NCBI GenBank assembly: GCA_950097015.1
Contig: CATNEN010000018.1
Location: forward strand, 157,967 to 221,966
Reading direction: 5' to 3'
DNA: 64,000 nt
DNA from: Macrostomum hystrix
Taxonomy: Eukaryota; Animalia; Platyhelminthes
The position numbers and the translations under genes are program-made. Under the pieces are notes generated by a model that worked only from the letters and a program-made list of their open reading frames with translations, was not told the origin of the DNA and searched no databases. Every line of letters starts with the position of its first letter. Positions within the stretch are counted from its first letter, which is position 1. Below, piece by piece: positions 2,274-64,000 of this stretch.

Positions 2274-2480
2274 AATATTCTATTTAGCAAGCGGGTAAAG
2301 GTAGAAAGTTTGCTTGATCTTTTAGAAGCAGTGCAAGAGCAGCAGGCATTGTTGACACAGCAGCGTTTCTGGAGTCCCTTGCCATCTCGCCATGTAATGC
2401 GACTTGGAGTTCTTTAGGGCGAAGGAAAGCTAAATTAGTCTAGGATTGTGGCTGAGACTGGGCCGTTGCGGCGAGACCTC

Positions 2481-3653
2481 ATGACAGCTGAGGCTTGCAC
2501 TGAGTCAACAAGGCAGGACTCGGGTCTGTTTTTTCAGCAGTATAAGAGTAAATATCTACCGAATGCACGAACCTTCGGTCGAGTTACGCGCTGTTTCTCG
2601 CTGCCTGAGTTATGTTTAAACATGGCCGAGATGTACGTACGACAGAAATTGAACCAGGCGCAGGTCGGTGAGACGCAGGTCGGTGAGACGCAGGTCGGTG
2701 AGGCGCAGTTCGGTGAGACGCAGGTCGGTGAGACGCAGGTCGGTGAGACGAAGGTCGGTGAGACGAAGGTCGGTGAGACGAAGGTTGGTAAGACGCAGGT
2801 CGGTGAGACGCAGGACGGTGAGATGAAGGTCGGTGAGATGAAGGTCGGTGAGGCGCAGGTCGGTGAGACGAAGGTCGGTGAGGCGCAGGTCGGTGAGGCG
2901 CAGGTCGGTGAGACGAAGGTCGGTGAGGCGCAGGTCGGTGAGACGAAGGTCGGTGAGGCGCAGGTCGGTGAGGCGCAGGTCGGTGAGGCGCAGGTCGGTG
3001 AGACGCAGGTCGATGAGACGAAGGTCGGTGAGACGAAGGTCGATGAGACGCAGGTCGGTGAGACGCAGGTCGGTGAGGCGCAGGTCGGTGAGGCGCAGGT
3101 CCGTGAGGCGCAGGTCGATGAGACGAAGGTCGGTGAGGCGCAGGTCCGTGAGGCGCAGGTCCGTGAGGCGCCAATGGTTCGCAGAATTCGCCATTCGACC
3201 AGCAGCAACTGTGTCGCACAGCAGTCACAAGCAATGGAGCAGCCACGCAGGCACAGCACTATCTTTCCGCAGCAACAACATCTTGTACTTCAGCGTCCTA
3301 GGCGAGGTAGAATGTTCAGTCTATTTCATTGGGAAAGCGCCGCTGAAGCTCTGCGATGGCAACAGCCAGCTGGTACAAAGTAAGATTACGGAAATGAAAG
3401 TTAACAACTTTGCGTACCATAGCTTTCAATTAGTAGAACATTTTATGACCATATTCAATGATTGGGATTTGAGTAAACATGAATTCAAGTAAGTTGAAAT
3501 TTTATTGAATCGGGATTTCAGTGAAACAATATTTCAAAAAACTGGGATTTGAAAGAATCGGGATTTAATTTTGATTTTGATTTGAGTTATTTGGGATTTC
3601 AGTGAATTGTGTTTGAGAAAGAAAGCTTGACTTTGTTGTTAATTTTCAGCCGT

Positions 3654-7864: not shown

Positions 7865-8089
7865 GGGTTGGAGTTGTATGCTTTATTATTACAATTAGTA
7901 CAGTAATAAAATTATAAATATTCATGCGTTTTACTGCCCTTTAGTAATTTTTATATGCGCCTTTTTTATTTACAAATGTTTAATGATTTTGAGTTTCTTA
8001 ACTGAATAATTGTCAAACAATTTCGTTCACAAAGGTGACATTAACTTACCTTCATACTGGCGAAGCGATTCCTTCCACCCTTGTTCACC

Positions 8090-11000
8090 CTCTTCTTTTC
8101 TTCTCTTCTTTTCTTCTCTTCTCTTCTTCTTTCCCTTCCCTTCTTCTTTCCCCTTCTCTTCCCTTCTCTTCTCTCCTCTCTTCTCTTCTTTTTTCTTCTC
8201 TTCTCTTCTTTTTTCTTCTTTTTTCTTCTCTTCTCTCTTCTCCTCTTCTCTTCTCTTCTTCCCTTCTTCTTTTTTCTTCTCTTCTCTTCTCTCTTCTCCT
8301 CTTCTCTTCTCTTCTTCCCTTCTTCTTTTTTCTTCTCTTCTCTTCTCTCTTCTCCTCTTCTCTTCTCTTCTTCCCTTCTTCTCTTCTTCTCCTCTTTTCT
8401 TCTCTTCTCTTCTCTTCTCTTCTCTTCTTCTCTTCTCCTCTCTTTTCTTCTCTTCTCTTCTCTTCTCTTCTCTTCTTCTCTTCTCCTCTCTTTTCTTCTC
8501 TTCTCTTCTCTTCTTTTTTCTTCTCTTCTCTTCTCTTCTTTTTTCTTCTCTTCTCTTCTCCTCTCTTTTCTTCTCTTCTCTTCTCTTCTCTTCTCTTCTC
8601 TTCTCTCTTCTTCTCTTCTTCTCCTCTCTTCTCTTCTCTTCTCTTCTCTTCTTCTCTTCTTCTCTCTTTTCTTCTCTTCTCTTCTCTTCTCTTCTTCTCT
8701 TCTCCTCTCTTTTCTTCTCTTCTCTTCTCTTCTCTTCTCTTCTTCTCTTTTTCTCTTCTCTTCTTCTCTTCTCTTCTTTTCTCTTCTTTTCTTCTCTTCT
8801 TTTCTTCTCTTCTCTTCTCTTCTCTTCTTCCCTTCTCCTCTTCTTCTCCTCCTCTTCTCTTCTCTTCTCTTCTCTTCTTCTCTCCTCTTCTCTTCCCTTC
8901 TCTTCTCTTCTCTTCTCTTCTCTTCTTTTCTCTTCTTTTCTTCTCTTCTTTTCTTCTCTTCTCTTCTCTTCTCTTCTTCCCTTCTCCTCTTCTTCTCCTC
9001 CTCTTCTCTTCTCTCTTCTTCTCTTCTTCTCTCCTCTTCTCTTCTCTTCTCTCCTCTTCTCTTCCCTTCTCTCCTCTTCTCTTCTCTTCTTCTCTTCTCT
9101 TCTCTTCTCCTCTTCTCTTCTCTTCTCCTCTTCTCTTCTCTTCTTCTCTTCTTCTTTCCCTTCCATTCTTCTTTCCCCTTCTCTTCTCTTCTCTTCTCTT
9201 CTTCCCTTCTCCTCTTCTTCTCCTCCTCTTCTCTTCTCTCTTCTTCTCTTCTTCTCTCCTCTTCTCTTCTCTTCTCTCCTCTTCTCTTCCCTTCTCTCCT
9301 CTTCTCTTCTCTTCTTCTCTTCTCTTCTCTTCTCCTCTTCTCTTCTCTTCTCCTCTTCTCTTCTCTTCTCTCTTCTTCTCTTCTCTTCTCTTCTCTTCTC
9401 TTCTTCTCTTTTTCTCTTCTCTTGTTCTCTTCTCTTCTTTTCTCTTCTTTTCTTCTCTTCTTTTCTTCTATTCTCTTCTCTTCTCTTCTTCCCTTCTCCT
9501 CTTCTTCTCCTCCTCTTCTCTTCTCTCTTCTTCTCTTCTTCTCTCCTCTTCTCTTCTCTTCTCTCCTCTTCTCTTCCCTCTCTTCTCTTCTCTTCTTCTC
9601 TTCTCTTCTCTTCTCCTCTTATCTTCTCTTCTCCTCTTCTCTTCTCTTCTTCTCTTCTTCTTTCCCTTCCCTTCTTCTTTCCCCTTCTCTTCTCTCCTCT
9701 TCTCTTCTCTTCTTTTCTTCTCTTCTCTTCTCTTCTTTTCTTCTCTTCTTTTCTCTTCTTTTCTTCTCTTCTTTTCTTCTCTTCTCTTCTCTTCTCTTCT
9801 TCCCTTCTCCTCTTCTTCTCCTCCTCTTCTCTTCTCTTCTCTTCTCTTCTTCTCTTTTTCTCTTCTCTTCTTCTCTTCTCTTCTTTTCTCTTCTCTTCTT
9901 CCCTTCTCCTCTTCTTCTCCTCCTATTCTCTTCTCTCTTCTTCTCTTCTTCACTCCTCTTCTCTTCTCTTCTCTCCTCTTCTCTTCCCTTCTCTCCTCTT
10001 CTCTTCCCTTCTCTTCTCTTCTCTTCTCTTCTCTTCTTTTCTCTTCTTTTCTTCTCTTCTTTTCTTCTCTTCTCTTCTCTTCTCTTCTTCCCTTCTCCTC
10101 TTCTTCTCCTCCTCTTCTCTTCTCTCTTCTTCTCTTCTTCTCTCCTCTTCTCTTCTCTTCTCTCCTCTTCTCTTCCCTTCTCTCCTCTTCTCTTCTCTTC
10201 TTCTCTTCTCTTCTCTTCTCCTCTTCTCTTCTCTTCTCCTCTTCTCTTCTCTTCTTCTCTTCTTCTTTCCCTTCCATTCTTCTTTCCCCTTCTCTTCTCT
10301 TCTCTTCTCTTCTTCCCTTCTCCTCTTCTTCTCCTCCTCTTCTCTTCTCTCTTCTTCTCTTCTTCTCTCCTCTTCTCTTCTCTTCTCTCCTCTTCTCTTC
10401 CCTTCTCTCCTCTTCTCTTCTCTTCTTCTCTTCTCTTCTCTTCTCCTCTTCTCTTCTCTTCTCCTCTTCTCTTCTCTTCTCTCTTCTTCTCTTCTCTTCT
10501 CTTCTCTTCTCTTCTTCTCTTTTTCTCTTCTCTTGTTCTCTTCTCTTCTTTTCTCTTCTTTTCTTCTCTTCTTTTCTTCTATTCTCTTCTCTTCTCTTCT
10601 TCCCTTCTCCTCTTCTTCTCCTCCTCTTCTCTTCTCTCTTCTTCTCTTCTTCTCTCCTCTTCTCTTCTCTTCTCTCCTCTTCTCTTCCCTCTCTTCTCTT
10701 CTCTTCTTCTCTTCTCTTCTCTTCTCCTCTTATCTTCTCTTCTCCTCTTCTCTTCTCTTCTTCTCTTCTTCTTTCCCTTCCCTTCTTCTTTCCCCTTCTC
10801 TTCTCTCCTCTTCTCTTCTCTTCTTTTCTTCTCTTCTCTTCTCTTCTTTTCTTCTCTTCTTTTCTCTTCTTTTCTTCTCTTCTTTTCTTCTCTTCTCTTC
10901 TCTTCTCTTCTTCCCTTCTCCTCTTCTTCTCCTCCTCTTCTCTTCTCTTCTCTTCTCTTCTTCTCTTTTTCTCTTCTCTTCTTCTCTTCTCTTCTTTTCT

Positions 11001-13093
11001 CTTCTCTTCTTCCCTTCTCCTCTTCTTCTCCTCCTATTCTCTTCTCTCTTCTTCTCTTCTTCACTCCTCTTCTCTTCTCTTCTCTCCTCTTCTCTTCCCT
11101 TCTCTCCTCTTCTCTTCTCTTCTTCTCTTCTTTCCCCTTCTCTTCTCTCCTCTTCTCTTCTCTTCTCTTCTCTTCTTTTCTTCTCTTCTTTTCTTCTCTT
11201 CTCTTCTCTTCTCTTCTTTTCTTCTCTTCTTTTCTTCTCTTCTCTTCTCTTCTTCTCTTCTCTTCTCTTCTCTTCTTTTTTCTTCTCTTCTTCTCTTCTC
11301 TTCTCTTCTCTTCTCTTCTCTTCTCCTCTTCTCTTCTCTTCTTCTCTTCTTCTTTCCCTTCCCTTCTTCTTTCCCCTTCTCTTCTCTCGTCTTCTCTTCT
11401 CTTCTTTTCTTCTCTTCTCTTCTCTTCTTCTCTTCTCTTCTTTTCTTTTTCTCTTCTTTTCTCTTCTCTTCTCTTCTTTTCTTTTCTCTTCTCCTCTTCT
11501 CTTCTCTTCTTTTTTCTTCTCTTCTCTTCTCTTCTCTTCTCTTCTCTTCTCTCCTCTTCTCTTCTCTTCTCTCCTCTTCTCTTCCCTTCTCTTCTCTTCT
11601 CTTCTCTTCTTCTCTTTTTCTCTTCTCTTCTTCTCTTCTCTTCTTTTCTCTTCTTTTCTTCTCTTCTTTTCTTCTCTTCTCTTCTCTTCTCTTCTTCCCT
11701 TCTCCTCTTCTTCTCCTCCTCTTCTCTTCTCTCTTTTTCTCTTCTTCTCTCCTCTTCTCTTCTCTTCTCTCCTCTTCTCTTCCCTTCTCTCCTCTTCTCT
11801 TCCCTTCTCTTCTCTTCTCTTCTCTTCTTCTCTTCTCTTCTCTTCTCCTTTTCTCTTCTCTTCTCCTCTTCTCCTCTCTTCTTCTCTTCTTCTTTCCCTT
11901 CGCTTCTTCTTTCCCCTTCTCTTCTCTCCTCTTCTCTTCTCTTCTCTTCTCTTCTTTTCTTCTCTTCTCTTTTCTTCTCTTCTTTTCTCTTCTTCTCTTC
12001 TCTTCTTTTCTTCTTCTCTTCTTTTCTCTTCTCTTCTCTTCTTTTCTTTTCTCTTCTCCTCTACTCTTCTCTTCTTTTTTCTTCTCTTCTCTTCTCTTCT
12101 CTTCTCTTCTTCTCTTCTTCTCTCTTTTCTTCTCTTCTCTTCTCTTCTCTTCTCTTCTTCTCTTCTCTTCTTTTCTCTTCTTTTCTTCTCTTCTTTTCTT
12201 CTCTTCTCTTCTCTTCTCTGCTTCCCTTCTCCTCTTCTTCTCCTCCTCTTCTCTTCTCTCTTCTTCTCTTCTTCTCTCCTCTTCTCTTCTCTTCTTTTCT
12301 TCTCTTCTCTTCTCTTCTCTTCTTCTCTTCTCTTCTCTTCTCTTCTTTTTTCTTCTTTTCTTCTCTTCTCTTCTCTTCTCTTCTTTTTTCTTCTCGTCTT
12401 CTCTTCTCTTCTCTTCTCTTCTTTTTTCTTCTCTTCTTCTCTTCCCTTCTCTTCTCTTCTCTTCTCTTCTCTTCTCTTCTCTTCTTCTCTTCTCTTCTCT
12501 TCTCTTCTCTTCTCTTCTCTTCTCTTCTCCTCTTCTCTTCTTCTTTCCCTTCCCTTCTTCTTTCCCCTTCTCTTCTCTTCTTTTCTTCTCTTCTTTTCTT
12601 CTCTTCTCTTCTCTTCTCTTCTTCCCTTCTCCTCTTCTTCTCCTCCTCTTCTCTTCTCTCTTCTTCTCTTCTCTTCTCTTCTCTTCTTTTCTTCTCTTCT
12701 CTTCTCTTCTTCTCTTCTCTTCTTTTCTTTTTCTCTTCTTTTCTCTTCTCTTCTCTTCTTTTCTTTTCTCTTCTCCTCTTCTCTTCTCTTCTTTTTTCTT
12801 CTCTTCTCTTCTCTTCTCTTCTCTTCTCTTCTCTCCTCTTCTCTTCTCTTCTCTCCTCTTCTCTTCCCTCTCTTCTCTTCTCTTCTTCTCTTCTCTTCTC
12901 TTCTCCTCTTATCTTCTCTTCTTTTCTTCTCTTCTCTTCTCTTCTTCTCTTCTCTTCTTTTCTTTTTCTCTTCTTTTCTCTTCTCTTCTTTTTTCTTCTC
13001 CTCTTCTCTTCTCTTCTCTTCCCTTCTCTTCTCTTCTCTTCTCTTCTCTTCTCTTCTCTCCTCTTCTCTTCTCTTCTCTCCTCTTCTCTTCCC
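8090..13093. repeat. Degenerate (CTCTT)n tract 2 (~5 kb) with an internal 1111-bp duplication
   Basis: Rare variants recur at 1111-bp spacing (CTTATCTT 9618/10729; TTGTTCTC 9422/10533; CCTATTCT 9922/11033). Confidence 0.98.
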
Positions 13094-13098
13094 TGTAG

Positions 13099-13490
13099 TG
13101 CAGAACAAATGGCCAAACGATGCTAATGAGACACAGCAGGCACTGATCGAGGCAGTTCAACGCAACATTGAACAGGCGGAAGGTCGAGGCGAAAGCACTG
13201 AAGTGCTAGAAGAGATACTTGAGGTGCTTAAAAATGACCCGCATGCGCTAAAGCGGTTCGCAAAGCTTACAGTCTACAGCCACTCCACGATGGGTAGCAT
13301 TGTGCGCGAGAACTGGGCCTACCTGGCCCGCAATCTGGCATCCGACATCGGCGGCATCCTTGGTCTCTGGCTAGGCGTGTCAATTATTAGCACCTTCGAG
13401 TTCTTCGAGCTATTTATCAGGCTTTTCAGTGTCAGACGAAAGCAAAACCATCAGCAACAAGCAGCCGCCGCCGATGCCGAGCTGACTTAG
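13099..13490 (+). CDS. Terminal exon of a DEG/ENaC (ASIC/degenerin-family) channel subunit; upstream exons not found in the window
   Basis: Acceptor CCCTGTAG|TG at 13098/13099. Translation ...KWP...KRFAKLTVYSH...ENWAYLARNLASDIGGILGLWLGVSIISTFEFFELFIRL contains the family's pre-TM2 WP and KLxVY motifs and the TM2 DIGGxLGLWLGxS signature with the GxS selectivity filter. Confidence 0.9.
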
Positions 13491-18408: not shown

Positions 18409-18688
18409 CATACATGCGCAACACCCGGCCGACCTGGCCGAACCGGCCGGGTAAAACGAGGGCCAAGCAAGGTAAGTCGCAAAAACCAATGGACCAAGCG
18501 CAAAAAATCAAAGGGGAGACCAAGGGACAAAAAAGGAAGGCGTGAAGAAAAGGAAAAAGGGGAGAGAAAAAGAGAGCAAATGAGAGCAAACTAAGTCGTA
18601 AATAGAGCAATGAAACGAACTAAGTCGCAAATGAGAGCAAAAACTAAGTCGCATGGCTGGCTAAGATTTGGGAGGTTGCTCATGTATG
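18409..18688 (-). mobile_element. hAT-type MITE, copy 2 (280 bp), same family, opposite orientation
   Basis: TIRs CATACATGCGCAAC...GTTGCTCATGTATG; own 8-bp TSD ATCTCTGT at 18401-18408 and 18689-18696; interior is a diverged reverse complement of copy 1. Confidence 0.9.
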
Positions 18689-18810
18689 ATCTCTGTTTTC
18701 TGGCAACAAAATTTGCTTTGTGTGTTATAATTGCTTTTACAGAACTACTTCCAATGCAGTTTAGCATAACTTCACTGCTAATTTTGGCCTTGATTCCAAC
18801 ATTGCTTAAT

Positions 18811-21800
18811 CTCTTCTTCTTCTCTTCTCTCTCTTCTTTTCTTCTCTTCTCTTCTTTTCTTCTCTTCTTTTCTTCTCTTCTCTTCTCTTCTTCTCTTCTC
18901 TTCTCTTCTCTTCTTTTTTCTTCTCTTCTTCTCTTCTCTTCTCTTCTCTTCTCTTCTCTTCTCTTCTCCTCTTCTCTTCTCTTCTTCTCTTCTTCTTTCC
19001 CTTCCCTTCTTCTTTCCCCTTCTCTTCTCTCCTCTTCTCTTCTCTTCTTTTCTTCTCTTCTCTTCTCTTCTTCTCTTCTCTTCTTTTCTTTTTCTCTTCT
19101 TTTCTCTTCTCTTCTCTTCTTTTCTTTTCTCTTCTCCTCTTCTCTTCTCTTCTTTTTTCTTCTCTTCTCTTCTCTTCTCTTCTCTTCTCTTCTCTCCTCT
19201 TCTCTTCTCTTCTCTCCTCTTCTCTTCCCTTCTCTTCTCTTCTCTTCTCTTCTTCTCTTTTTCTCTTCTCTTCTTCTCTTCTCTTCTTTTCTCTTCTTTT
19301 CTTCTCTTCTTTTCTTCTCTTCTCTTCTCTTCTCTTCTTCCCTTCTCCTCTTCTTCTCCTCCTCTTCTCTTCTCTCTTCTTCTCTTCTTCTCTCCTCTTC
19401 TCTTCTCTTCTCTCCTCTTCTCTTCCCTTCTCTCCTCTTCTCTTCCCTTCTCTTCTCTTCTCTTCTCTTCTTCTCTTCTCTTCTCTTCTCCTTTTCTCTT
19501 CTCTTCTCCTCTTCTCCTCTCTTCTTCTCTTCTTCTTTCCCTTCCCTTCTTCTTTCCCCTTCTCTTCTCTCCTCTTCTCTTCTCTTCTCTTCTCTTCTTT
19601 TCTTCTCTTCTCTTTTCTTCTCTTCTTTTCTCTTCTTCTCTTCTCTTCTTTTCTTCTTCTCTTCTTTTCTCTTCTCTTCTCTTCTTTTCTTTTCTCTTCT
19701 CCTCTTCTCTTCTCTTCTTTTTTCTTCTCTTCTCTTCTCTTCTCTTCTCTTCTTCTCTTCTTCTCTCTTTTCTTCTCTTCTCTTCTCTTCTCTTCTCTTC
19801 TTCTCTTCTCTTCTTTTCTCTTCTTTTCTTCTCTTCTTTTCTTCTCTTCTCTTCTCTTCTCTGCTTCCCTTCTCCTCTTCTTCTCCTCCTCTTCTCTTCT
19901 CTCTTCTTCTCTTCTTCTCTCCTCTTCTCTTCTCTTCTTTTCTTCTCTTCTCTTCTCTTCTCTTCTTCTCTTCTCTTCTCTTCTCTTCTTTTTTCTTCTT
20001 TTCTTCTCTTCTCTTCTCTTCTCTTCTTTTTTCTTCTCTTCTTCTCTTCTCTTCTCTTCTCTTCTTTTTTCTTCTCTTCTTCTCTTCCCTTCTCTTCTCT
20101 TCTCTTCTCTTCTCTTCTCTTCTCTTCTTCTCTTCTCTTCTCTTCTCTTCTCTTCTCTTCTCTTCTCTTCTTCTCTTCTCTTCTTCTTTCCCTTCCCTTC
20201 TTCTTTCCCCTTCTCTTCTCTTCTTTTCTTCTCTTCTTTTCTTCTCTTCTCTTCTCTTCTCTTCTTCCCTTCTCCTCTTCTTCTCCTCCTCTTCTCTTCT
20301 CTCTTCTTCTCTTCTCTTCTCTTCTCTTCTCTTCTTCTCTTTTTCTCTTCTCTTCTTCTCTTCTCTTCTTTTCTCTTCTTTTCTTCTCTTCTTTTCTTCT
20401 CTTCTCTTCTCTTCTCTTCTTCCCTTCTCCTCTTCTTCTCCTCCTCTTCTCTTCTCTCTTCTTCTCTTCTTCTCTCCTCTTCTCTTCTCTTCTCTCCTCT
20501 TCTCTTCCCTCTCTTCTCTTCTCTTCTTCTCTTCTCTTCTCTTCTCCTCTTATCTTCTCTTCTTTTCTTCTCTTCTCTTCTCTTCTTCTCTTCTCTTCTT
20601 TTCTTTTTCTCTTCTTTTCTCTTCTCTTCTCTTCTTTTCTTTTCTCTTCTCCTCTTCTCTTCTCTTCTTTTTTCTTCTCTTCTCTTCTCTTCTCTTCTCT
20701 TCTCTTCTCTCCTCTTCTCTTCTCTTCTCTCCTCTTCTCTTCCCTTCTCTTCTCTTCTCTTCTCTTCTTCTCTTTTTCTCTTCTCTTCTTCTCTTCTCTT
20801 CTTTTCTCTTCTTTTCTTCTCTTCTTTTCTTCTCTTCTCTTCTCTTCTCTTCTTCCCTTCTCCTCTTCTTCTCCTCCTCTTCTCTTCTCTCTTCTTCTCT
20901 TCTTCTCTCCTCTTCTCTTCTCTTCTCTCCTCTTCTCTTCCCTTCTCTCCTCTTCTCTTCCCTTCTCTTCTCTTCTCTTCTCTTCTTCTCTTCTCTTCTC
21001 TTCTCCTTTTCTCTTCTCTTCTCCTCTTCTCCTCTCTTCTTCTCTTCTTCTTTCCCTTCCCTTCTTCTTTCCCCTTCTCTTCTCTCATCTTCTCTTCTCT
21101 TCTCTTCTTTTCTTCTCTTCTCTTTTCTTCTCTTCTTTTCTCTTCTTCTCTTCTCTTCTTTTCTTCTTCTCTTCTTTTCTCTTCTCTTCTCTTCTTTTCT
21201 TTTCTCTTCTCCTCTTCTCTTCTCTTCTTTTTTCTTCTCTTCTCTTCTCTTCTCTTCTCTTCTTCTCTTCTTCTCTCTTTTCTTCTCTTCTCTTCTCTTC
21301 TCTTCTCTTCTTCTCTTCTCTTCTTTTCTCTTCTTTTCTTCTCTTCTTTTCTTCTCTTCTCTTCTCTTCTCTGCTTCCCTTCTCCTCTTCTTCTCCTCCT
21401 CTTCTCTTCTCTCTTCTTCTCGTCTTCTCTCCTCTTCTCTTCTCTTCTTTTCTTCTCTTCTCTTCTCTTCTCTTCTTCTCTTCTCTTCTCTTCTCTTCTT
21501 TTTTCTTCTTTTCTTCTCTTCTCTTCTCTTCTCTTCTTTTTTCTTCTCTTCTTCTCTTCTCTTCTCTTCTCTTCTTTTTTCTTCTCTTCTTCTCTTCCCT
21601 TCTCTTCTCTTCTCTTCTCTTCTCTTCTCTTCTCTTCTTCTCTTCTCTTCTCTTCTCTTCTCTTCTCTTCTCTTCTCTTCTCCTCTTCTCTTCTTCTTTC
21701 CCTTCCCTTCTTCTTTCCCCTTCTCTTCTCTTCTTTTCTTCTCTTCTTTTCTTCTCTTCTCTTCTCTTCTCTTCTTCCCTTCTCCTCTTCTTCTCCTCCT

Positions 21801-23800
21801 CTTCTCTTCTCTCTTCTTCTCTTCTCTTCTCTTCTCTTCTCTTCTTCTCTTTTTCTCTTCTCTTGTTCTCTTCTCTTCTTTTCTCTTCTTTTCTTCTCTT
21901 CTTTTCTTCTCTTCTCTTCTCTTCTCTTCTTCCCTTCTCCTCTTCTTCTCCTCCTCTTCTCTTCTCTCTTCTTCTCTTCTTCTCTCCTCTTCTCTTCTCT
22001 TCTCTCCTCTTCTCTTCCCTCTCTTCTCTTCTCTTCTTCTCTTCTCTTCTCTTCTCCTCTTATCTTCTCTTCTCCTCTTCTCTTCTCTTCTTCTCTTCTT
22101 CTTTCCCTTCCCTTCTTCTTTCCCCTTCTCTTCTCTCCTCTTCTCTTCTCTTCTTTTCTTCTCTTCTCTTCTCTTCTTTTCTTCTCTTCTTTTCTCTTCT
22201 TTTCTTCTCTTCTTTTCTTCTCTTCTCTTCTCTTCTCTTCTTCCCTTCTCCTCTTCTTCTCCTCCTCTTCTCTTCTCTTCTCTTCTCTTCTTCTCTTTTT
22301 CTCTTCTCTTCTTCTCTTCTCTTCTTTTCTCTTCTCTTCTTCCCTTCTCCTCTTCTTCTCCTCCTATTCTCTTCTCTCTTCTTCTCTTCTTCTCTCCTCT
22401 TCTCTTCTCTTCTCTCCTCTTCTCTTCCCTTCTCTCCTCTTCTCTTCTCTTCTTCTCTTCTTTCCCCTTCTCTTCTCTCCTCTTCTCTTCTCTTCTCTTC
22501 TCTTCTTTTCTTCTCTTCTCTTCTTTTCTTCTCTTCTTTTCTTCTCTTCTCTTCTCTTCTTCTCTTCTCTTCTCTTCTCTTCTTTTTTCTTCTCTTCTTC
22601 TCTTCTCTTCTCTTCTCTTCTCTTCTCTTCTCTTCTCCTCTTCTCTTCTCTTCTTCTCTTCTTCTTTCCCTTCCCTTCTTCTTTCCCCTTCTCTTCTCTC
22701 CTCTTCTCTTCTCTTCTTTTCTTCTCTTCTCTTCTCTTCTTCTCTTCTCTTCTTTTCTTTTTCTCTTCTTTTCTCTTCTCTTCTCTTCTTTTCTTTTCTC
22801 TTCTTTTCTTCTCTTCTCTTCTCTTCTTCTCTTCTCTTCTCTTCTCTTCTTTTTTCTTCTCTTCTCCTCTTCTCTTCTCTTCTTCTCTTCTTCTTTCCCT
22901 TCCCTTCTTCTTTCCCCTTCTCTTCTCTCCTCTTCTCTTCTCTTCTTTTCTTCTCTTCTCTTCTCTTCTTCTCTTCTCTTCTTTTCTTTTTCTCTTCTTT
23001 TCTCTTCTCTTCTCTTCTTTTCTTTTCTCTTCTCCTCTTCTCTTCTCTTCTTTTTTCTTCTCTTCTCTTCTCTTCTCTTCTCTTCTCTTCTCTCCTCTTC
23101 TCTTCTCTTCTCTCCTCTTCTCTTCCCTTCTCTTCTCTTCTCTTCTCTTCTTCTCTTTTTCTCTTCTCTTCTTCTCTTCTCTTCTTTTCTCTTCTTTTCT
23201 TCTCTTCTTTTCTTCTCTTCTCTTCTCTTCTCTTCTTCCCTTCTCCTCTTCTTCTCCTCCTCTTCTCTTCTCTCTTCTTCTCTTCTTCTCTCCTCTTCTC
23301 TTCTCTTCTCTCCTCTTCTCTTCCCTCCTCTTCTCTTCTCTCTTCTTCTCTTCTTCTCTCCTCTTCTCTTCTCTTCTCTCCTCTTCTCTTCCCTTCTCTC
23401 CTCTTCTCTTCCCTTCTCTTCTCTTCTCTTCTCTTCTTCTCCTCTCTTCTCTTCTCCTTTTCTCTTCTCTTCTCCTCTTCTCCTCTCTTCTTCTCTTCTT
23501 CTTTCCCTTCCCTTCTTCTTTCCCCTTCTCTTCTCTCCTCTTCTCTTCTCTTCTCTTCTCTTCTTTTCTTCTCTTCTCTTTTCTTCTCTTCTTTTCTCTT
23601 CTTCTCTTCTCTTCTTTTCTTCTTCTCTTCTTTTCTCTTCTCTTCTCTTCTTTTCTTTTCTCTTCTCCTCTTCTCTTCTCTTCTTTTTTCTTCTCTTCTC
23701 TTCTCTTCTCTTCTCTTCTTCTCTTCTTCTCTCTTTTCTTCTCCTCTCTACTCTTCTCTTCTCTTCTTCTCTTCTCTTCTTCTCTTCTCTTCTTCTCTTC
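18811..23800. repeat. Degenerate (CTCTT)n tract 3 (~5 kb), paralogous to tract 2, with an internal 1510-bp duplication
   Basis: CTGCTTCCC at 19861/21371 and CTTATCTT at 20549/22059 (1510-bp spacing); shares diagnostic variants with tract 2. Confidence 0.98.
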
Positions 23801-23947
23801 AGCTCAGCAGCCAATGAGACTCCTGCAGCTATGAACGATTTTGGTTGGCTGCTGCGGACTGCAAAAGCATAGTCCTAAACCAAACACTGAGCTGCCCTAC
23901 TCGACCTAATTTATCACTTTCCCAAACCACAAGCAGACACCTGCAAA

Positions 23948-26900
23948 ATGTTTCCCTTACTCACAATACTCACCGCTGTCCTCCTGTACCTCATGAACTC
24001 ACTTCATTCCTCACACCACCGAGAAGACGCACAAGAACTCACCGACCAGGACCTCCTCGCAGCCATCAGAGACGACCGAGTGGAACCCGTTCAGCGATTC
24101 ATTAACAGCGGCGGGAGCCTCGACACCTTCATCGCCTATGCTGACTCATTCTTTACTCCAGCAATGCTCGCTTGCCGATTCGGAAGACATGAAATTCTCG
24201 TGAGACTCATCCGAGCCATTGCAGATGTAGATAAGCAGAACTGGAGAGGAACGACGGCATTGTATATTGCATCACTATATGGACACCACCGACTGGTGAA
24301 ATCACTCATCAAAGCACGAGCCGACGTCAATCTTCAAGATAATACTGGCGCCTCACCTCTCCACATAGCATCCTGCAATGGCCATAACGACGTCGTCCAC
24401 TCACTCATCAAAGCACGAGCCGACGTCAATCTTCAAACAAATACTGGCTACTCACCTCTCTACATTGCATCACAAAATGGCCATAACGACGTCGTCCACT
24501 CACTCATCAAAGCACGAGCCGACGTCAATCTTCAAACAATTACTGGCGCCTCACCTCTCTACATTGCATCATATCAAGGCCATAACGACGTCGTCCACTC
24601 ACTCATCAATGCACGAGCCGACGTCAATCTTCAAGAAAATACTGGCTACTCACCTCTCCACATTGCATCACAAAATGGCCATAACGACGTCGTCCACTCA
24701 CTCATCAAAGCACGAGCCGACGTCAATCTTCAAACAATTACTGGCGCCTCACCTCTCTACATTGCATCATATCAAGGCCATAACGACGTCGTCCACTCAC
24801 TCATCAAAGCACGAGCCGACGTCAATCTTCAAGAAAATACTGGCGCCTCACCTGTCTACATTGCATCACAAAATGGCCATAACGACGTCGTCCACTCACT
24901 CATCAAAGCACGAGCCGACGTCAATCTTCAAGATAATACTGGCGCCTCACCTCTCTACATTGCATCACGAAATGGCCATAACGACGTCGTCCACTCACTC
25001 ATCAAAGCACGAGCCGACGTCAATCTTCAAAAAAATACTGGCGCCTCACCTCTCTACATTGCATCTCGCAATGGCCACCTCAGTGTTGTCGAGTCACTCA
25101 TGAAGGTCGTTCATAGCCCCGACTTGCTGACAGCTGCTCTGCGAATCGCCACGGAAATCGGCCATGACCAAGTGGTTGACCTGCTGAGCCGTGGATCCTC
25201 CGCGCCATTGCCTGAGAAGCAAAACAGGTAGGAGCTCCTGTTTCTTGTAAAAGTCACCTGAACAATCATAGATACTTCGGATTCTCTGAGTATTCAGACT
25301 CCAAATCTGATAGCTGAACTTCGGAACTGATTGCTATTGTGTTAATGTGGTATCGTCAGTTATTGTACATATAAAATATGGTAGCCTGTGTAGAACCCTT
25401 GTGAGCACAAAAAGGTTCTCTCGAATACCTGCTGCTTTTACTTCGCATTGTTAAGAGCTGGCGAATTTATAGCGAAAAGCCTCGAATTCCCAACAATGAC
25501 CACTAGGAGTAAAATAACGGAAAACTACGATAATAGGAAATAGTTATTACATATGTCTGCTTGCGCCGAAGATTATACCACAAGGATAGGAAATTGTTAG
25601 TGGCGCTGGTGTGCCGCCGGCCCTAGTTAGCAGTGGCGCCCTCAGAAGGCGAAAGACAGAACTTCCTAGTAGTTCTTATTGTCAATGCCTGTTTAGCCAC
25701 AGACAGCAGACTCCACTTCAAAATTCTCAGTTTATTCTCAGTTTATGAATGCCGCCTCCTCTCACCCTTCAGAGCCTCCCAGCCTCACTGAACCTCAGCA
25801 CTGCCGCCTCCTCTCACCCTTCAGAGCCTCCCAGACTCACTGTAACTCAGCACTGCCGCCTCCTCTCACCCTTCAGAGCCTCCCAGCCTCACTGAAACTC
25901 AGCACTGCCGCCTCCTCTCACCCTTCAGAGCCGCACCCAGCGACGCAGAGCTGAGCCAGCAGCTGCACTCCAAGCTCTCTCAGTCGGGATTCGTGGACTC
26001 CAGAGCCGCCTTGCAGATCGCTGTGGCTGACGTCTTGCAGGATGTTCTCAGGAAGAGAATGAACGATGACGACTGGTTCGCTGTGGGCAGCTTCTCTGAG
26101 GCCTGGGGCAACAGCCTGGTCTCTCTGGATGGCAGAACTGACATCGACTCTGACATCGATGTTATTCAGCTGATTCCAGGAAGGCCGATTCACCCGAGAG
26201 ATGTGTGCGAGTGCGACCGAGTGGAGGCTGCTCAGACAGTGGAGCTCAGCAATGGCCACATCCTGAGCTCCGGATTCGGTGAGAATTTCCTGTCAGAGAC
26301 TGTCGGGATGGCTGGGACAAGAATTGAACATGAGTTTGGCTTGCTCATCTTCTTTGGCTTTCTAAAGCAAACAACAAACAAGGAAAGCAAACAAATGTTC
26401 AGTCCAGGTTTGAAATGCAGAGATATTGAAAATAATATTGAAAATAATCGTGAACGTGCTCCCCTTCTCTTTGTTTCTTAGGCTCGCAATACTTTCACAG
26501 TCACAGGTGTGCAAAATTACAGTTTTTGAGGTGACCGCCCCAGTCCATGGACTGAACCGTTGTACACAGCTTTTGGAAGCGTCGTACAAACGCTACGGCT
26601 GGGCCATTGCAAATTTCGGTTATTTCTATTATATTATATTCTGTTGCCGCTTTTACAGAATTCGTTTTCTGTGATTCTGAAATTATGCCAATCAATGTCC
26701 ATTGATTGTCAACAATATTCCGAACAGCCGATTCTTACTAGCCATATAGTAGCTAGTTATCCAGTAGACAGGAAAATTATCCTAATTTATGTGGGCGGGA
26801 AAACCCCCGCCGCAGGAAAATCCCATCGAATTTCCAGTCCAGATTTGAATCTCGGCCTGAGGGAACGATGCTTGTCCAAGAGCTGGAATCATAACCTCGT

Positions 26901-28761
26901 ATTTATTCAGCTCAGCCAGCTGAAGGTTACAGTAGAAATTTGAGGGGGCTGGTGACTCCCCAGTACAAAGACTGAAGAGCTGTATACAGTACTCACAAAA
27001 TACTCATAAGAAACTAAAGAAGCAAGGAAGAATTGAAAATAATCGTGCACGTGCTGCCCTCCGTAGGGGGCAAAAGTTTCTAGTCTGCACTAAATTTTCA
27101 TATAAATCGCAGCTACAAACCATCTTTGCACAATTTTTTTATATTATCGAGAAATAGTTCTGTGTCTATTAACTTGAAATCTGATGGCATTTTACATATT
27201 TCTTGCATTTCCGTTTTCTCCAGCTTCCAACCCAGCCTACACTGAAAATGGCTCAGCCCTGAGACCGTCTGTGGACCGAGTCACCGCCCGCCGCCTCTGC
27301 CGCTACCCTCCCATCGCGCCGCTGCAGCCACCAAGAGTCTCCAACTCCAACATCCCCCAGTCCGTGCTGCAGTCGCTCCAGCGAGACATCACCTCTGCCT
27401 CATGGCCCTGTCACGTGGTGCACGCAGCTCCTCCCGGAATGGGGGGCCAGCAGCTCCGAGTGAGCAGCAGCTTCCTGGAGAGGCGACTGCTGCGAAGTCT
27501 CAGCACTCTGCAAGGCCAGCTGTTCATCATACTCAAGTGGCTGCTGAAGAAGAAAATCTCAAACGTCGGCTTCAAGTCCTATCACGCAAAGACCGTCACG
27601 TTCCGAATGCTGGAGGAGACACCTGCTGAGCAGTGGAAGCCGGAGAATCTCGTGAGTCTCACGACACGCTCGCTGCAGATTTTGCTTGACGGTGTGGAGA
27701 GCGGCTGCAGATCAGACACACCTGACGGTCGGATCCTGGAGCACTTCTTCCTGAGCGATGCCGCTGTGTACCTGAAGGGCTTGAAGTCAGCTGAGAGAGT
27801 GAGCGAAGCGTTGAATCGGGCAGCCGGCGCATTGAGAGACGCCATGGCTGAGCTGCCTCAGCTGCTGCTGCAGTTCGAGGACAGTCTGCGACCCGTCACC
27901 GACTCGGGCCGATTCCACTTCCAACCGTTCCTCATCCTGCCTCTACTCAATGACCGACCCGTGTCAGAAGCCAAGACATGCGAGTTCCACGAGATCTACG
28001 ACATCGTGAGAGAGTCCGTGCTTCGTCTGTCCGATGGAGACCGCAGCCCGCAGTCCCGAGAGAGTCTCGCAGAGCTGATCAACAAACTGCCAGACTGCGC
28101 CCGATCAGCGCGAGAGTCTCTCAGAGCGCTGGCCTGCCTGAAGTTCGGCGACAGACGCACAGCTGAAAAAGTTGTGAGCGACTGCGGGCCGTTCAGTGCG
28201 AGCAGAGGCATCGATTGGGGAGCTGAGAGGTCAGCGAGAGAGGCCACGGACTTTGTGTGGCAGCACCTGAAGAGCCGAGACTCCGCCTGGAAATTCTGCT
28301 TGGAGTTTGACGAGCGACCGAAGCTGCCGATTCAGCACGAAGTCTTTGCCGACTGCTTTCCGCTGCAGATGATGAACTACAGCACATTATTCTACCTGAA
28401 CTTTGACGCTCTGCTGCGGGCTCTTTGCAATGAGTTGACAGTAGCAGGAGACCGGAGCGATCAGGACTGGATCCAGGATGTGGCTCAGAGGGAGGATGCG
28501 GATGAGCAGGAGCTGCTGGTGGCTGCGGCGATCTGCGGAGATCTGGAGCTGCTGCGGCAGCTGCGCAGAAGAATCACTCACGAGCTGTGCCGGCTGCCGG
28601 CGTGGCTGCAGCAGAAGATTGAGAGGCTGAGCAGTCAAGGTGAAGATCGCCAAGACCAAGGTGAATATGCATTTGAGCATTCGAGTCGGAGTCAACTTGC
28701 ATACCAAGAAAGAAAAACCAGTTGTGGATCCAAATGCTGCCGGTGCTGTGTGTGTTTGTGA
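23948..28761 (+). CDS. Ankyrin-repeat cGAS-like receptor (cGLR / Mab-21-family nucleotidyltransferase); join(23948..25227,25929..26278,27224..28761), ~1055 aa
   Basis: Both introns are phase-consistent (AG|GTAG phase 2 to CTTCAG|A; G|GTGAG phase 1 to CTCCAG|CT); 3168 nt is a whole number of codons. Exon 1 has ~10 ankyrin repeats. Exon 2 has GSFSE (26086) and SDID (D at 26152, 26158). Exon 3 has VDRV (D at 27274), [20 protein letters not shown] (cf. cGAS SYHVKT) and LEHFF. Start could be ATG 23948 or 23993. Confidence 0.9.
24314..25080 (+). repeat. Eight near-identical 99-bp coding repeats (33-aa ankyrin units)
   Basis: Unit GCACGAGCCGACGTCAATCTTCAA...CACTCACTCATCAAA; [33 protein letters not shown]. 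Confidence 0.97.
25751..25930 (+). repeat. Intronic 52-bp minisatellite, each unit containing a copy of the exon-2 3' splice site
   Basis: CTCTCACCCTTCAG|AG with the AG at 25771, 25823, 25875 and 25927. Confidence 0.92.
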
Positions 28762-28925
28762 CCCTAAAGTGGATGCCAAGAAGACGATTCAACCAGAAAA
28801 TCAGAAAACACATTTTAACAGTAATTCTATGATCGACTGCAAAGCCATGATAAATGTGGATATGAAAACGAGCCTCAAATCCTGCAGCTCCGACGCCGCC
28901 CTCCGCCATTTCCGCAAAATTAATA

Positions 28926-62600: not shown

Positions 62601-64000
62601 CTCTTTTCCTCTTCTCTTCTTCTCTTCTCTTCTCTTCTCTTCTCTCCTCTTCTCTTCTCTTCTCTCCTCTTCTCTTCTCTTCTTCTCTTCTTCTCTCTTC
62701 TCTTCTCTTCTTCTCTTCTCTTCTATTCTCTTCTCTTCTTTTCTTCCCTTCTCTTCTTCTCTTCTCTTCACTTCTCTTCTTCTCTTCTTCTCTTCTTCTC
62801 TTCTCTTCTCTTCTTCTCCTCTTCTTTTCTCTTCTCTTCTCTTCTCTTCTCATCTCATCTCTTCTTCTCTTCTCTTCTTCTCTTCTCTTCTTCTCTTCTC
62901 TTCTTCTCTTCTTCTCTTCTTCTCTTCTCTTCTTCTCTTCTCTTTTCTTCTCTTCTTCTCTCCTCTCTTCTTCTCTTCTCTTTTCCTCCTCTCTTCTTCT
63001 CTTCTCTTTTCCTCTTCTCTTCTTCTCTTCTCTTCTCTTCTCTTCTCTCCTCTTCTCTTCTCTCTTCTTCTCTTCTCTTCTCTTCTTCTCTTCTCCTCTC
63101 TTCTCTTCTCTTCTTCTCTTCTCTTCTATTCTCTTCTCTTCTTCTCTTCTCTTTTCCTCTTCTCTTCTTCTCTTCTCTTCTCTTCTCTTTTCCTCTTCTC
63201 TTCTTCTCTTCTCTTCTCTTCTCTTCTCTCCTCTTCTCTTCTCTTCTCTTCTTCTCTTCTCTTCTATTCTCTTCTCTTCCTTTCTTCCCTTCTCTTCTTC
63301 TCTTCTCTTCACTTCTCTTCTTCTCTTCTTCTCTTCTTCTCTTCTCTTCTCTTCTTCTCTTCTTCTTTTCTCTTCTCTTCTCTTCTCTTCTCATCTCATC
63401 TCTTCTTCTCTTCTCTTCTTCTCTTCTCTTCTTCTCTTCTCTTCTTCTCTTCTCTTCTTCTCTTCTTCTCTTCTCTTCTTCTCTTCTCTTTTCTTCTCTT
63501 CTTCTCTCCTCTCTTCTTCTCTTCTCTTTTCCTCTTCTCTTCTTCTCTTCTCTTCTTCTCTTCTCTTTTCCTCTTCTCTTCTTCTCTTCTCTTCTCTTCT
63601 CTTCTCTCCTCTTCTCTTCTCTTCTCTCCTCTTCTCTTCTCTTCTTCTCTTCTCCTCTCTTCTCTTCTCTTCTTCTCTTCTCTTCTATTCTCTTCTCTTC
63701 TTTTCTTCCCTTCTCTTCTTCTCTTCTCTTCACTTCTCTTCTTCTCTTCTTCTCTTCTTCTCTTCTCTTCTCTTCTTCTCTTCTTCTTTTCTCTTCTCTT
63801 CTCTTCTCTTCTCATCTCATCTCTTCTTCTCTTCTCTTCTTCTCTTCTCTTCTTCTCTTCTCTTCTTCTCTTCTTCTCTTCTTCTCTTCTCTTCTTCTCT
63901 TCTCTTTTCTTCTCTTCTTCTCTCCTCTCTTCTTCTCTTCTCTTTTCCTCCTCTCTTCTTCTCTTCTCTTTTCCTCTTCTCTTCTTCTCTTCTCTTCTCT
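59665..64000. repeat. Degenerate (CTCTT)n tract 4 (>4.3 kb, runs off the window) with ~380-570-bp higher-order units
   Basis: Private marker CATCTCATCT recurs at 60385, 60921, 61376, 61760, 62161, 62277, 62851, 63392 and 63813. Confidence 0.98.

What the first reader, a model, noticed from the sequence alone, without database searches (positions are those of the whole stretch)
23948..28761. Ankyrin-array cGAS-like receptor with an apparently intact catalytic triad
Seen: three phase-consistent exons join ~10 ankyrin repeats to a Mab-21/cGAS-type NTase (GSFSE, SDID, VDRV, SYHAKT), followed by ~300 aa of unrecognised sequence. Established: cGAS/cGLRs make cyclic dinucleotide second messengers using a GS loop plus three acidic residues. 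Inference: an NLR-like modular receptor in which a protein-binding repeat array, rather than nucleic acid, gates cyclic-dinucleotide synthesis. The ORF track splits it into three unrelated-looking pieces, so it is easy to miss.
Basis: partly seen in the sequence, partly recalled or inferred. Interest (0 to 1): 0.88.

Follow-up and report, generated by a model that had tools for sequence, protein, structure and literature searches.

The report
Flatworm ankyrin-fused cGAS-like receptor gene
This is a real, expressed three-exon flatworm gene that joins an ankyrin-repeat array to a cGAS-like enzyme with its catalytic residues in place, but ankyrin-cGAS-like fusions from a related flatworm are already in a published catalogue and nobody yet knows what switches them on.

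Summary
Three phase-consistent exons (23948-25227, 25929-26278, 27224-28761) give a 1055-aa protein. It has a short hydrophobic N-terminus, about 11 ankyrin repeats, a cGAS/Mab-21-type nucleotidyltransferase, a 293-aa helical extension and a Cys-rich ...CVCL end.

- **Splicing:** transcript contigs join the exons at the predicted GT..AG sites, but they come from this gene or a very close copy.
- **Fold:** a confident AlphaFold model of a 67%-identical paralogue matches human cGAS over the whole catalytic domain (Z 19.2).
- **Catalytic residues:** G480/S481, D502, D504 and D561 align with the catalytic columns of Pfam-positive mollusc Mab-21 proteins. They are intact in 97 of 110 family members.
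- **C-terminal extension:** it is TPR-like and resembles the tails of bivalve cGLRs.

Nothing shows that the ankyrin array gates catalysis, and there is no NLR-type domain.

The architecture is not new. Li et al. 2023 list ankyrin-cGLR fusions, including Macrostomum lignano proteins, and cloned five M. lignano cores. No flatworm is among their 15 named active enzymes.

This scan has also flagged several similar genes elsewhere in the same genome.

Verdict: a new member of a known kind, of moderate interest.

The parts
23948..25227 (+). Exon 1: start codon, hydrophobic N-terminal helix (residues 1-20), and an ankyrin array of about 11 repeats (residues ~27-422). It ends in phase 2 at a GT donor.
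   Evidence: ORF list. Pfam Ank 10 stretches, E 6e-71. Repeat register. Donor sequence. Transcript contigs start at 23929.
24302..25077 (+). 99-nt tandem array (7.8 copies, 91% matches) encoding the near-identical internal ankyrin repeats. Amino-acid differences cluster at six positions per repeat, on or next to the canonical binding surface.
   Evidence: Tandem Repeats Finder. Per-codon comparison: 20 nonsynonymous against 6 synonymous minority codons, with multi-base changes at repeat positions 6, 7, 10, 14, 18 and 19.
25228..25928 (+). Intron 1 (GT..AG). It contains a 52-bp tandem array (25750-25932) that repeats the acceptor cccttcag four times. Only the last copy keeps the frame.
   Evidence: Sequence. 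TRF. Joint 25224->25926 (cut +3) in three runs. Upstream acceptors give stops 6-43 codons after exon 1.
25929..26278 (+). Exon 2: N-terminal spine helices, strand 1, the GS loop (G480 S481 at 26086-26091) and strand 2 with D502 and D504 (26152-26160).
   Evidence: Splice sites. Alignment to paralogues. Secondary-structure order in the model. hhalign against Pfam-positive Mab-21 proteins. Conservation 106-108 of 110.
26279..27223 (+). Intron 2 (GT..AG). Its first ~300 nt still show contig depth in the transcript runs.
   Evidence: Sequence. Joint from 26278 in two runs, and depth table. Read-through would stop at residue 611.
27224..27879 (+). Exon 3, first part: the rest of the nucleotidyltransferase, with the third catalytic Asp D561 (27274-27276) and the C-terminal helix bundle including SYHAKT (27577-27594).
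   Evidence: Pfam Mab-21_C 19.1 bits, below the cut-off. cGAS by phmmer and by profile, E 0.02 and 2e-5. VIA-align Z 19.2 to human cGAS 162-521 over model residues 9-334. D561 conserved in 100 of 110.
27880..28758 (+). Exon 3, second part: a 293-aa C-terminal extension, predicted as a TPR-like alpha-solenoid with two small beta hairpins, then a long helix and a disordered tail.
   Evidence: AlphaFold model pLDDT 86, pTM 0.82. No significant PDB match, best Z 8.0, all TPR or solenoid proteins. AlphaFold DB cluster matches are family members, then tails of bivalve proteins, two of them named Mab-21-like.
28717..28761 (+). Cys-rich C-terminal end ...[10 protein letters not shown] plus the stop codon. 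It is a CaaX-like motif (CVCL, 28747-28758) with upstream cysteines.
   Evidence: Translation. Transcript depth is continuous through the stop. No CaaX-like end in any listed paralogue; several of them end in polybasic tails instead.

Best explanation
This is an expressed three-exon gene of a Macrostomum-type flatworm. It belongs to a large lineage-specific family of cGAS-like receptors (cGLRs).

The protein has three modules:
- an N-terminal ankyrin array of about 11 repeats, whose binding-surface positions vary between otherwise near-identical repeats;
- a complete cGAS/Mab-21 nucleotidyltransferase with GS loop and Asp-x-Asp...Asp triad;
- a TPR-like C-terminal extension of the kind seen in bivalve cGLRs.

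Most likely mechanism (inferred, not shown): the enzyme rests inactive. A non-nucleic-acid ligand, probably a protein or peptide, binds one of the two repeat modules. This releases or reorders the catalytic cage, which then makes a nucleotide second messenger from NTPs. The hydrophobic N-terminus and the Cys-rich CaaX-like end would place this at a membrane.

Shown here: gene structure, splicing, fold, conservation of the catalytic residues, family membership.

Inferred: enzymatic activity, the kind of ligand, gating by the repeats, the product, membrane targeting.
For: - Gene model and phases.
- Spliced transcript contigs at both junctions.
- Paralogues are colinear across the junctions.
- More than 100 related M. 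lignano proteins, most with Ank domains.
- Model of paralogue core: pLDDT 90, pTM 0.90.
- The top 50 Foldseek PDB hits are all cGAS.
- VIA-align: Z 19.2 to human cGAS, 19.1 to MB21D2, 18.2 to Cv-cGLR1.
- AlphaFold DB Swiss-Prot top hits are Sp-cGLR2 and Cv-cGLR2, aligned over the extension as well.
- hhalign against Pfam Mab-21-positive proteins (the one with a source name is a bivalve's): probability 100, E 4e-51, with the GS, SDxD and third-Asp columns coinciding.
- GS+D+D+D intact in 97 of 110 family members.
- Enzyme pI 6.5 and extension pI 5.3, against pI above 8.5 for nucleic-acid-sensing cGLRs (PMC9980059).
- Ankyrin differences concentrate at binding-surface codons.
Against: - No biochemical evidence of activity exists for any member.
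- Li et al. cloned five M. lignano cGLR cores, and no flatworm is among their 15 named active enzymes.
- The strict published motif h[QT]GS is not met: Val precedes GS, and Arg follows the third Asp.
- Pfam Mab-21 does not reach its threshold on the window's own pieces.
- The structure was modelled on a 67%-identical paralogue, not the window's protein, and I could not measure carboxylate distances.
- An intact triad is not sufficient. Li et al. count Mab21L1/2 among human proteins with complete putative active sites, yet they have a developmental, non-immune role and are not known to synthesize a nucleotide signal.
- A STING-type receptor in this genome was not looked for.
- The transcript contigs are not locus-specific.
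Confidence: 0.55

Rival explanations
1. It is an active cGLR, but the ankyrin array is not the sensor. The array serves only for localisation or for recruiting downstream partners. Activation happens at the enzyme's own ligand groove or at the TPR-like C-terminal extension.
For: The TPR-like extension is the module shared with bivalve cGLRs and with Sp-cGLR2 and Cv-cGLR2. The whole core plus extension models as one rigid unit, pTM 0.90. Some family members appear to lack ankyrin repeats. Weak structural matches of the extension include ligand-sensing TPR domains such as MalT, PlcR, Rgg and Rap.
Against: The ankyrin repeats vary precisely at binding-surface positions while the rest of each repeat is kept nearly identical, and array length differs widely between paralogues. 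That pattern fits recognition of changing targets better than a fixed scaffold. Several ankyrin-less entries are partial gene models. The matches of the extension are below Z 8 and may reflect only a common helical arrangement.
Confidence: 0.25
2. It is a non-catalytic signalling or scaffolding protein with a cGAS-like fold, like MAB21L1 or MiD49/51, or like crustacean Mab21 proteins reported to act through IKK-epsilon. It may bind a nucleotide only as a cofactor.
For: No flatworm enzyme is among the named actives in the published screen. The strict [QT]GS motif is not met. A 2026 paper reports Mab21 proteins signalling outside the canonical enzymatic paradigm (PMC12928593, abstract seen). Thirteen of 110 family members have lost part of the motif.
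Against: Near-universal retention of GS and all three Asp across paralogues that are only 35-67% identical to the window's core is hard to explain without selection on catalysis. The published screen used cores without their repeat modules and only dsDNA and poly I:C as ligands.
Confidence: 0.15
3. The gene at this exact locus is a silent or decaying copy, and the transcript evidence comes from a neighbouring paralogue.
For: The contigs that bridge the junctions differ from the window by up to 7-14 letters per 100-165 nt in exon 1, and by 22-23 letters at the start of exon 3. Earlier notes report several similar genes nearby on the same piece.
Against: The 3168-nt reading frame is intact, with canonical splice sites and all conserved residues. 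In each of the three organism-C runs, about a third of the laid contigs (47-51 of 152-161) are at least 99% alike, with zero mismatches over exon 2.
Confidence: 0.05

Closest known systems
Macrostomum lignano ANK-Mab-21 proteins (e.g. BOX15_Mlig022307g1, Mlig030155g1, Mlig002394g1), included in the cGLR census of Li et al. 2023
   Same: The order of modules is the same: hydrophobic N-terminus, ankyrin array, cGAS-like core with GSFSEGWGN...SDIDV...VD, and the C-terminal extension. Identity is 60-67% and the proteins are colinear across both exon junctions.
   Different: No database protein exceeds about 67% identity over the whole length (71% over a partial core match), so this is a different species or an unannotated paralogue. 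The Cys-rich CaaX-like end is not seen in any listed paralogue. Repeat number differs.
Human/mouse cGAS and human MB21D2 (solved structures)
   Same: The bilobed nucleotidyltransferase cage is complete: Z 19.2 and 19.1, with about 265-287 residues aligned over cGAS 162-521. The GS loop, Asp/Glu pair on strand 2, third acidic residue and SYHxKT motif are all present.
   Different: Identity is only 10-20%. There is no basic DNA-binding surface by pI (6.5). The loop between GS and the first Asp is longer, at 20 residues. Ankyrin and TPR-like modules are added.
Bivalve and coral cGLRs with C-terminal helical/TPR extensions (Cv-cGLR2, Sp-cGLR2, Sinanodonta KAL3855470.1)
   Same: These are the nearest relatives outside flatworms by profile search (E about 1e-13 to 1e-14) and by hhalign (E 4e-51). 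The core is followed by a 250-300-aa helical extension.
   Different: In the Pfam scan of seven of these distant proteins no Ank domain was found. Two of them have recognisable TPR motifs by Pfam, and the window's extension has none. Pfam Mab-21 (PF03281) scores above threshold in them but not here.
[quoted passage not shown] 2023)
   Same: The concept is the same: a cGLR core fused to a protein-interaction repeat module.
   Different: They come from a different phylum and no sequence comparison was made here. Their function is equally unknown.
OAS1 p46 (prenylated nucleotidyltransferase sensor)
   Same: It is a related NTase-fold sensor that ends in a CaaX box directing it to membranes.
   Different: It belongs to a different subfamily (OAS, not Mab-21). 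Prenylation of CVCL here is only a motif match.

Membership tests
cGLR (criteria of Li et al. 2023, PMC9980059) | Relaxed active-site rule from their Methods: G[S/G] activation loop and [E/D]h[E/D] X50-90 [E/D] triad | tested here: met
   G480 S481; D502 I503 D504; 56 residues; D561. The rule is quoted.
cGLR (criteria of Li et al. 2023, PMC9980059) | Strict motif h[QT]GS X8-20 [DE]h[DE]h X50-90 h[DE]h | tested here: not met
   The regex finds no match. Val479 stands in place of Q/T, and Arg562 in place of the last hydrophobic residue. The spacings (20 and 54) fit. The M. lignano sequence #89 that they cloned (VMGS) also lacks Q/T, so the strict form was evidently not applied rigidly.
cGLR (criteria of Li et al. 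2023, PMC9980059) | [quoted passage not shown] | tested here: met
   hhalign of the family profile against Pfam-positive Mab-21 proteins covers both lobes, E 4e-51. The family profile hits cGAS in the C-lobe, E 2e-5.
cGLR (criteria of Li et al. 2023, PMC9980059) | Predicted structural homology to known cGLR/CD-NTase enzymes | tested here: met
   AlphaFold model pLDDT 90. cGAS Z 19.2, Cv-cGLR1 Z 18.2. The top 50 Foldseek hits are all cGAS. The model is of a 67%-identical paralogue, not the window's own protein.
cGLR (functional definition) | Ligand-dependent synthesis of a nucleotide second messenger | not testable with these tools
   This needs biochemistry. No flatworm is among the 15 named actives in the published screen.
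cGLR-STING pathway | A STING-type receptor encoded in the same genome | not tested
   No tool-supplied STING sequence was available to search with. The literature search gave nothing on Macrostomum STING.
Pfam Mab-21 (PF03281) / Mab-21_C (PF20266) | Score above the gathering threshold | tested here: not met
   Exon 2 piece: no hit. Exon 3 piece: Mab-21_C 19.1 bits against a cut-off of 24.1. The pieces had to be scanned apart, which lowers scores. Some paralogues pass Mab-21_C.
Ankyrin-repeat proteins | Tandem 33-residue Ank repeats | tested here: met
   Pfam Ank E 6e-71 with 10 stretches, Ank_2 E 3e-72. 33-residue register. 99-nt DNA period.
   No such Pfam domain in any of the three pieces. 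The central module is an NTase. The resemblance is in layout only.
TPR proteins (for the C-terminal extension) | Recognisable TPR motifs or a significant structural match | tested here: inconclusive
   No Pfam TPR. Foldseek PDB best E 0.1. VIA best Z 8.0, with nearly all top hits TPR or solenoid proteins. Bivalve relatives carry Pfam TPR in the same place.
CaaX-prenylated proteins | C-terminal Cys-aliphatic-aliphatic-X | tested here: inconclusive
   The protein ends in CVCL with four more Cys just upstream. The a2 position is Cys, not aliphatic. The motif is absent in the paralogues. Modification itself is not testable here.

The most novel reading that the evidence does not exclude
The ankyrin array, kept uniform by concerted evolution but diversified at its binding surface, directly recognises pathogen or symbiont proteins and thereby switches on cyclic-nucleotide synthesis at a membrane. 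This flatworm family would then be a protein-sensing branch of cGLR immunity: an expanded receptor repertoire functionally analogous to NLRs, in a phylum otherwise thought to have mostly lost cGLRs.
Probability: 0.25. Interest if true: 0.85.

Novelty: new member of a known kind. Interest (0 to 1): 0.45.

Why it matters
All cGLRs with a known trigger sense double-stranded nucleic acids. What the many 'orphan' cGLRs detect is an open question.

A family in which the enzyme is neutral to acidic and is flanked by two repeat modules is a natural place to look for a non-nucleic-acid ligand. One of those modules shows binding-surface diversification, and the family has expanded to over a hundred copies in one flatworm lineage.

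Macrostomum is a laboratory model with RNAi and transgenesis, so the idea can be tested.

The gene itself adds one more member, with an unusual lipidation-like tail, to a set that is already catalogued.

Tried and rejected
- **Pfam on the separate pieces:** only a sub-threshold Mab-21_C match.
- **phmmer of exon 2 against PDB:** nothing.
- **Looking for the window's own full-length protein in the databases:** not found. The best was about 67% identity. The structure therefore had to be modelled on a paralogue, and the spliced protein could not be handed to the structure or search tools by reference.
- **ESM Atlas feature search of the C-terminal extension:** only sub-0.9 chance-level hits.
- **Profile of the extension against PDB sequences:** nothing below E 0.06.
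- **Atlas shape search:** TM at most 0.42 by the query.
- **A simple regex for the third Asp across the family:** it gave false 'losses'. It was replaced by an alignment-based count.
- **Literature search for STING in Macrostomum:** unproductive.
- **Other long ORFs in the window:** low-complexity or without family matches. tblastn found no second paralogue inside the window.
- **Pseudogene reading:** considered and rejected because of the intact frame and the spliced transcripts.
- **True NLR/STAND membership:** considered and rejected because no ATPase module is present.
Full report
**1. Gene structure**

The ORF list shows three same-strand ORFs at 23948-25231, 25993-26481 and 27184-28761. 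Reading the sequence gives these splice sites:
- a GT donor after 25227 (AACAG|gtagga);
- an AG acceptor before 25929 (cccttcag|AGCC);
- a GT donor after 26278 (GGATTCG|gtgaga);
- an AG acceptor before 27224 (ttctccag|CTTCC).

Exon 1 ends with two bases of a codon and exon 2 supplies one. Exon 2 ends with one base and exon 3 supplies two. Joined in a script, the CDS is 3168 nt with a single terminal stop, 1055 aa.

**2. Independent support for the splicing**

Paralogous proteins from Macrostomum lignano run uninterrupted through both junctions. One example is ...NGHVLSPGYASRPA... across the exon 2/3 joint.

Contigs from three runs of one coded organism were laid on 23880-28900.
- They show a joint 25224->25926 with GT..AG ends (equivalent cut 25227|25929) in all three runs.
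- They show a joint leaving 26278 for the start of exon 3 in two runs.
- Depth is zero over most of both introns.

The bridging contigs are not identical to the window. They carry 7-14 differences in the last 100-165 nt of exon 1, none in exon 2, and 22-23 different letters at the first bases of exon 3. They also have in-frame 9-nt and 3-nt insertions further on. So they come from this gene or from a close allele or paralogue. The junction positions are confirmed for the gene type, but not strictly for this locus.

**3. Organism and family**

Every named homologue is from M. lignano. There were 23 hits with exon 3 alone and 54 with a paralogue's core as query. The exhaustive profile search gave 87 proteins below 1e-30, and the cluster look-up returned only M. 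lignano names for the close ones.

The best full-length identity to the window's protein is about 60-67%. The window's own protein is not in the collection. The window is therefore probably from another Macrostomum species or an unannotated copy (inference).

Earlier first-reader notes of this scan report similar ANK-cGLR genes 22, 48 and 138 kb upstream on the same piece and on other pieces. I did not check these. tblastn finds only this one copy inside the window.

**4. The enzyme module**

Sequence methods alone are weak on the window's pieces.
- Pfam Mab-21_C scores 19.1 bits, under its cut-off of 24.1.
- Nothing is found for exon 2.
- cGAS appears at E 0.02 around SYHAKT.
- A 32-sequence family profile improves this to E 2e-5.

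Structure settles the matter. An AlphaFold model of the paralogue core P0001:272-871 (67% identical to the window's core) has mean pLDDT 90.2 and pTM 0.90.
- Foldseek's top 50 PDB hits are all cGAS.
- VIA-align gives Z 19.2 to human cGAS (model 9-334 on cGAS 162-521), 19.1 to MB21D2 and 18.2 to the oyster Cv-cGLR1.

Both lobes of the cage are therefore present.

**5. The catalytic residues**

In the model the order of elements is the canonical NTase arrangement:
- long spine helices;
- strand 1 (48-51);
- GS followed by a short helix (53-56);
- a loop;
- strand 2 starting at the SDID motif (74-88);
- a later strand (131-140) carrying the third Asp at 133.

The next-nearest proteins outside the family are ~700-aa proteins that pass Pfam Mab-21 and Mab-21_C. 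One is from the mussel Sinanodonta, and two of them carry C-terminal TPR motifs. A local hhalign of the family alignment against 29 such proteins gives probability 100 and E 4e-51. It places GS on GS, SDIDV on SDxDxM, and PAvDxVxA on xxxDxVxA.

In an alignment of 110 family sequences the window's residues are conserved as follows:

| Residue | Conserved in |
|---|---|
| G480 | 108 of 110 |
| S481 | 108 of 110 |
| D502 | 107 of 110 |
| D504 | 106 of 110 |
| D561 | 100 of 110 |

All five are intact in 97 of the 110.

The relaxed published rule (G[S/G], [E/D]h[E/D] X50-90 [E/D]) is met with a spacing of 56. The strict h[QT]GS...h[DE]h form is not met, because of Val479 and Arg562. One of the M. 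lignano sequences cloned by Li et al. also has VMGS.

I could not obtain model coordinates. Convergence of the three carboxylates is therefore inferred from topology and alignment, not measured.

**6. The ~300 'unrecognised' residues**

The window's own residues 763-1055 (27880-28758) were modelled with a 50-sequence alignment, giving pLDDT 86 and pTM 0.82. The model is mostly paired helices with two small hairpins, then a 40-residue helix and a disordered tail.

- There is no significant PDB match by sequence or by Foldseek (best E 0.1).
- An exhaustive VIA-align pass gives at most Z 8.0. Nearly all top rows are TPR or other alpha-solenoid proteins, which the tool's own notes class as possibly just a common arrangement.
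- In AlphaFold DB clusters, the hits after family members are C-terminal parts of bivalve proteins, two of them named Mab-21-like.
- In Swiss-Prot models, Sp-cGLR2 and Cv-cGLR2 align over the whole 600 residues.

I read the extension as a divergent TPR-like module inherited with this spiralian branch of cGLRs. I hold that reading with moderate confidence.

**7. The ankyrin array**

A 33-residue register shows two degenerate N-terminal repeats, nine canonical ones and a C-terminal cap. The DNA has a 99-nt period with 7.8 copies at 91% matches.

Among the eight internal repeats compared, the recurrent differences fall at six codons, mostly as multi-base changes (for example GCC/TAC and CAA/TAT/TGC/CGA). 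Apart from the last, cap-like repeat, the rest of the unit is almost invariant. The count is 20 nonsynonymous against 6 synonymous minority codons.

By my alignment to the designed-ankyrin consensus (own knowledge), four of the six positions are ones randomised in DARPins. It does not show what is recognised.

**8. The ends of the protein**

The first ~20 residues are hydrophobic ([18 protein letters not shown]). Several full-length paralogues have a similar helix ending in LMQA.

The window's protein ends KCCRCCVCL. This is a CaaX-like box with extra cysteines, and no listed paralogue has it. Several paralogues end in polybasic tails instead. Both features hint at membrane association, but only as motif-level evidence.

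**9. Charge**

The enzyme part has pI 6.5 and the extension pI 5.3. Li et al. report pI above 8.5 for dsDNA- and dsRNA-sensing cGLRs, and they propose non-nucleic-acid ligands for acidic ones. This mildly favours a non-nucleic-acid trigger.

**10. What is already known**

Li et al. 2023 (PMC9980059) report the following.
- 87% of cGLRs are stand-alone enzymes, and some are fused to TPR or ankyrin modules.
- Their domain table lists PAA-prefixed accessions, the prefix their Table S3 gives for M. lignano proteins, with Ank_2 domains.
- They cloned five M. lignano cores, without the repeats, for their 140-enzyme screen.
- The 15 named active enzymes come from insects, anemones, molluscs, hydras and corals.

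The architecture and the family are therefore catalogued, and their function is not known.

**11. Verdict**

It is a modular cGLR with an apparently intact active site and a plausible non-nucleic-acid trigger. Gating by the ankyrin array, enzymatic activity and the product are all inferred. The NLR comparison is only an analogy.

It is a new member of a known kind, and interest is moderate.

Noticed in passing
window 25750-25932: A 52-bp unit containing the intron 1 acceptor (cccttcag) is repeated 3.5 times, giving four candidate acceptors. Only the last (exon start 25929) keeps the frame. The other three would end the protein 6-43 codons after the ankyrin array. Depth over the upstream copies is about 5, against 90-150 (14 in one run) in exon 2.
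   Followed up: partly
window 26279-26567: The first ~300 nt of intron 2 show contig depth similar to the exons in three transcript runs. This could be retention or read-through of the exon 2 donor, which would stop at residue 611 and give an ankyrin plus half-enzyme product. It could also be a repeated element expressed elsewhere.
   Followed up: partly
window 23948-24010 and paralogue N-termini: A ~20-residue hydrophobic N-terminal helix is shared with several full-length M. lignano paralogues, often ending in LMQA (LMNS here). Two paralogues start with MG and carry a CC pair, which suggests lipidation. It may be a membrane anchor or an intramolecular docking helix.
   Followed up: partly
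window 28717-28761: The Cys-rich CaaX-like end (KCCRCCVCL) was not found in any listed paralogue. Several of them end in polybasic tails such as KSKKVRMS, KAKKARLE and ERKSRKRK.
   Followed up: partly
window 8010-13490, 18610-23870, 60000-64000: There are kilobase-long C/T-only low-complexity tracts (GC skew and AT skew near -1). They create spurious ORFs of up to 1826 aa on both strands. One tract ends about 80 nt upstream of the gene's start codon.
   Followed up: no
window 27786 and 28246 (transcript contigs): The expressed copies carry in-frame insertions (9 nt after 27786, 3 nt after 28246) and many substitutions relative to the window. Several very similar alleles or paralogues are therefore transcribed.
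   Followed up: no
window 2448-3383: An ORF matches the Pfam GETHR pentapeptide repeat (E 3e-21). It is probably a low-complexity repeat rather than a gene.
   Followed up: no
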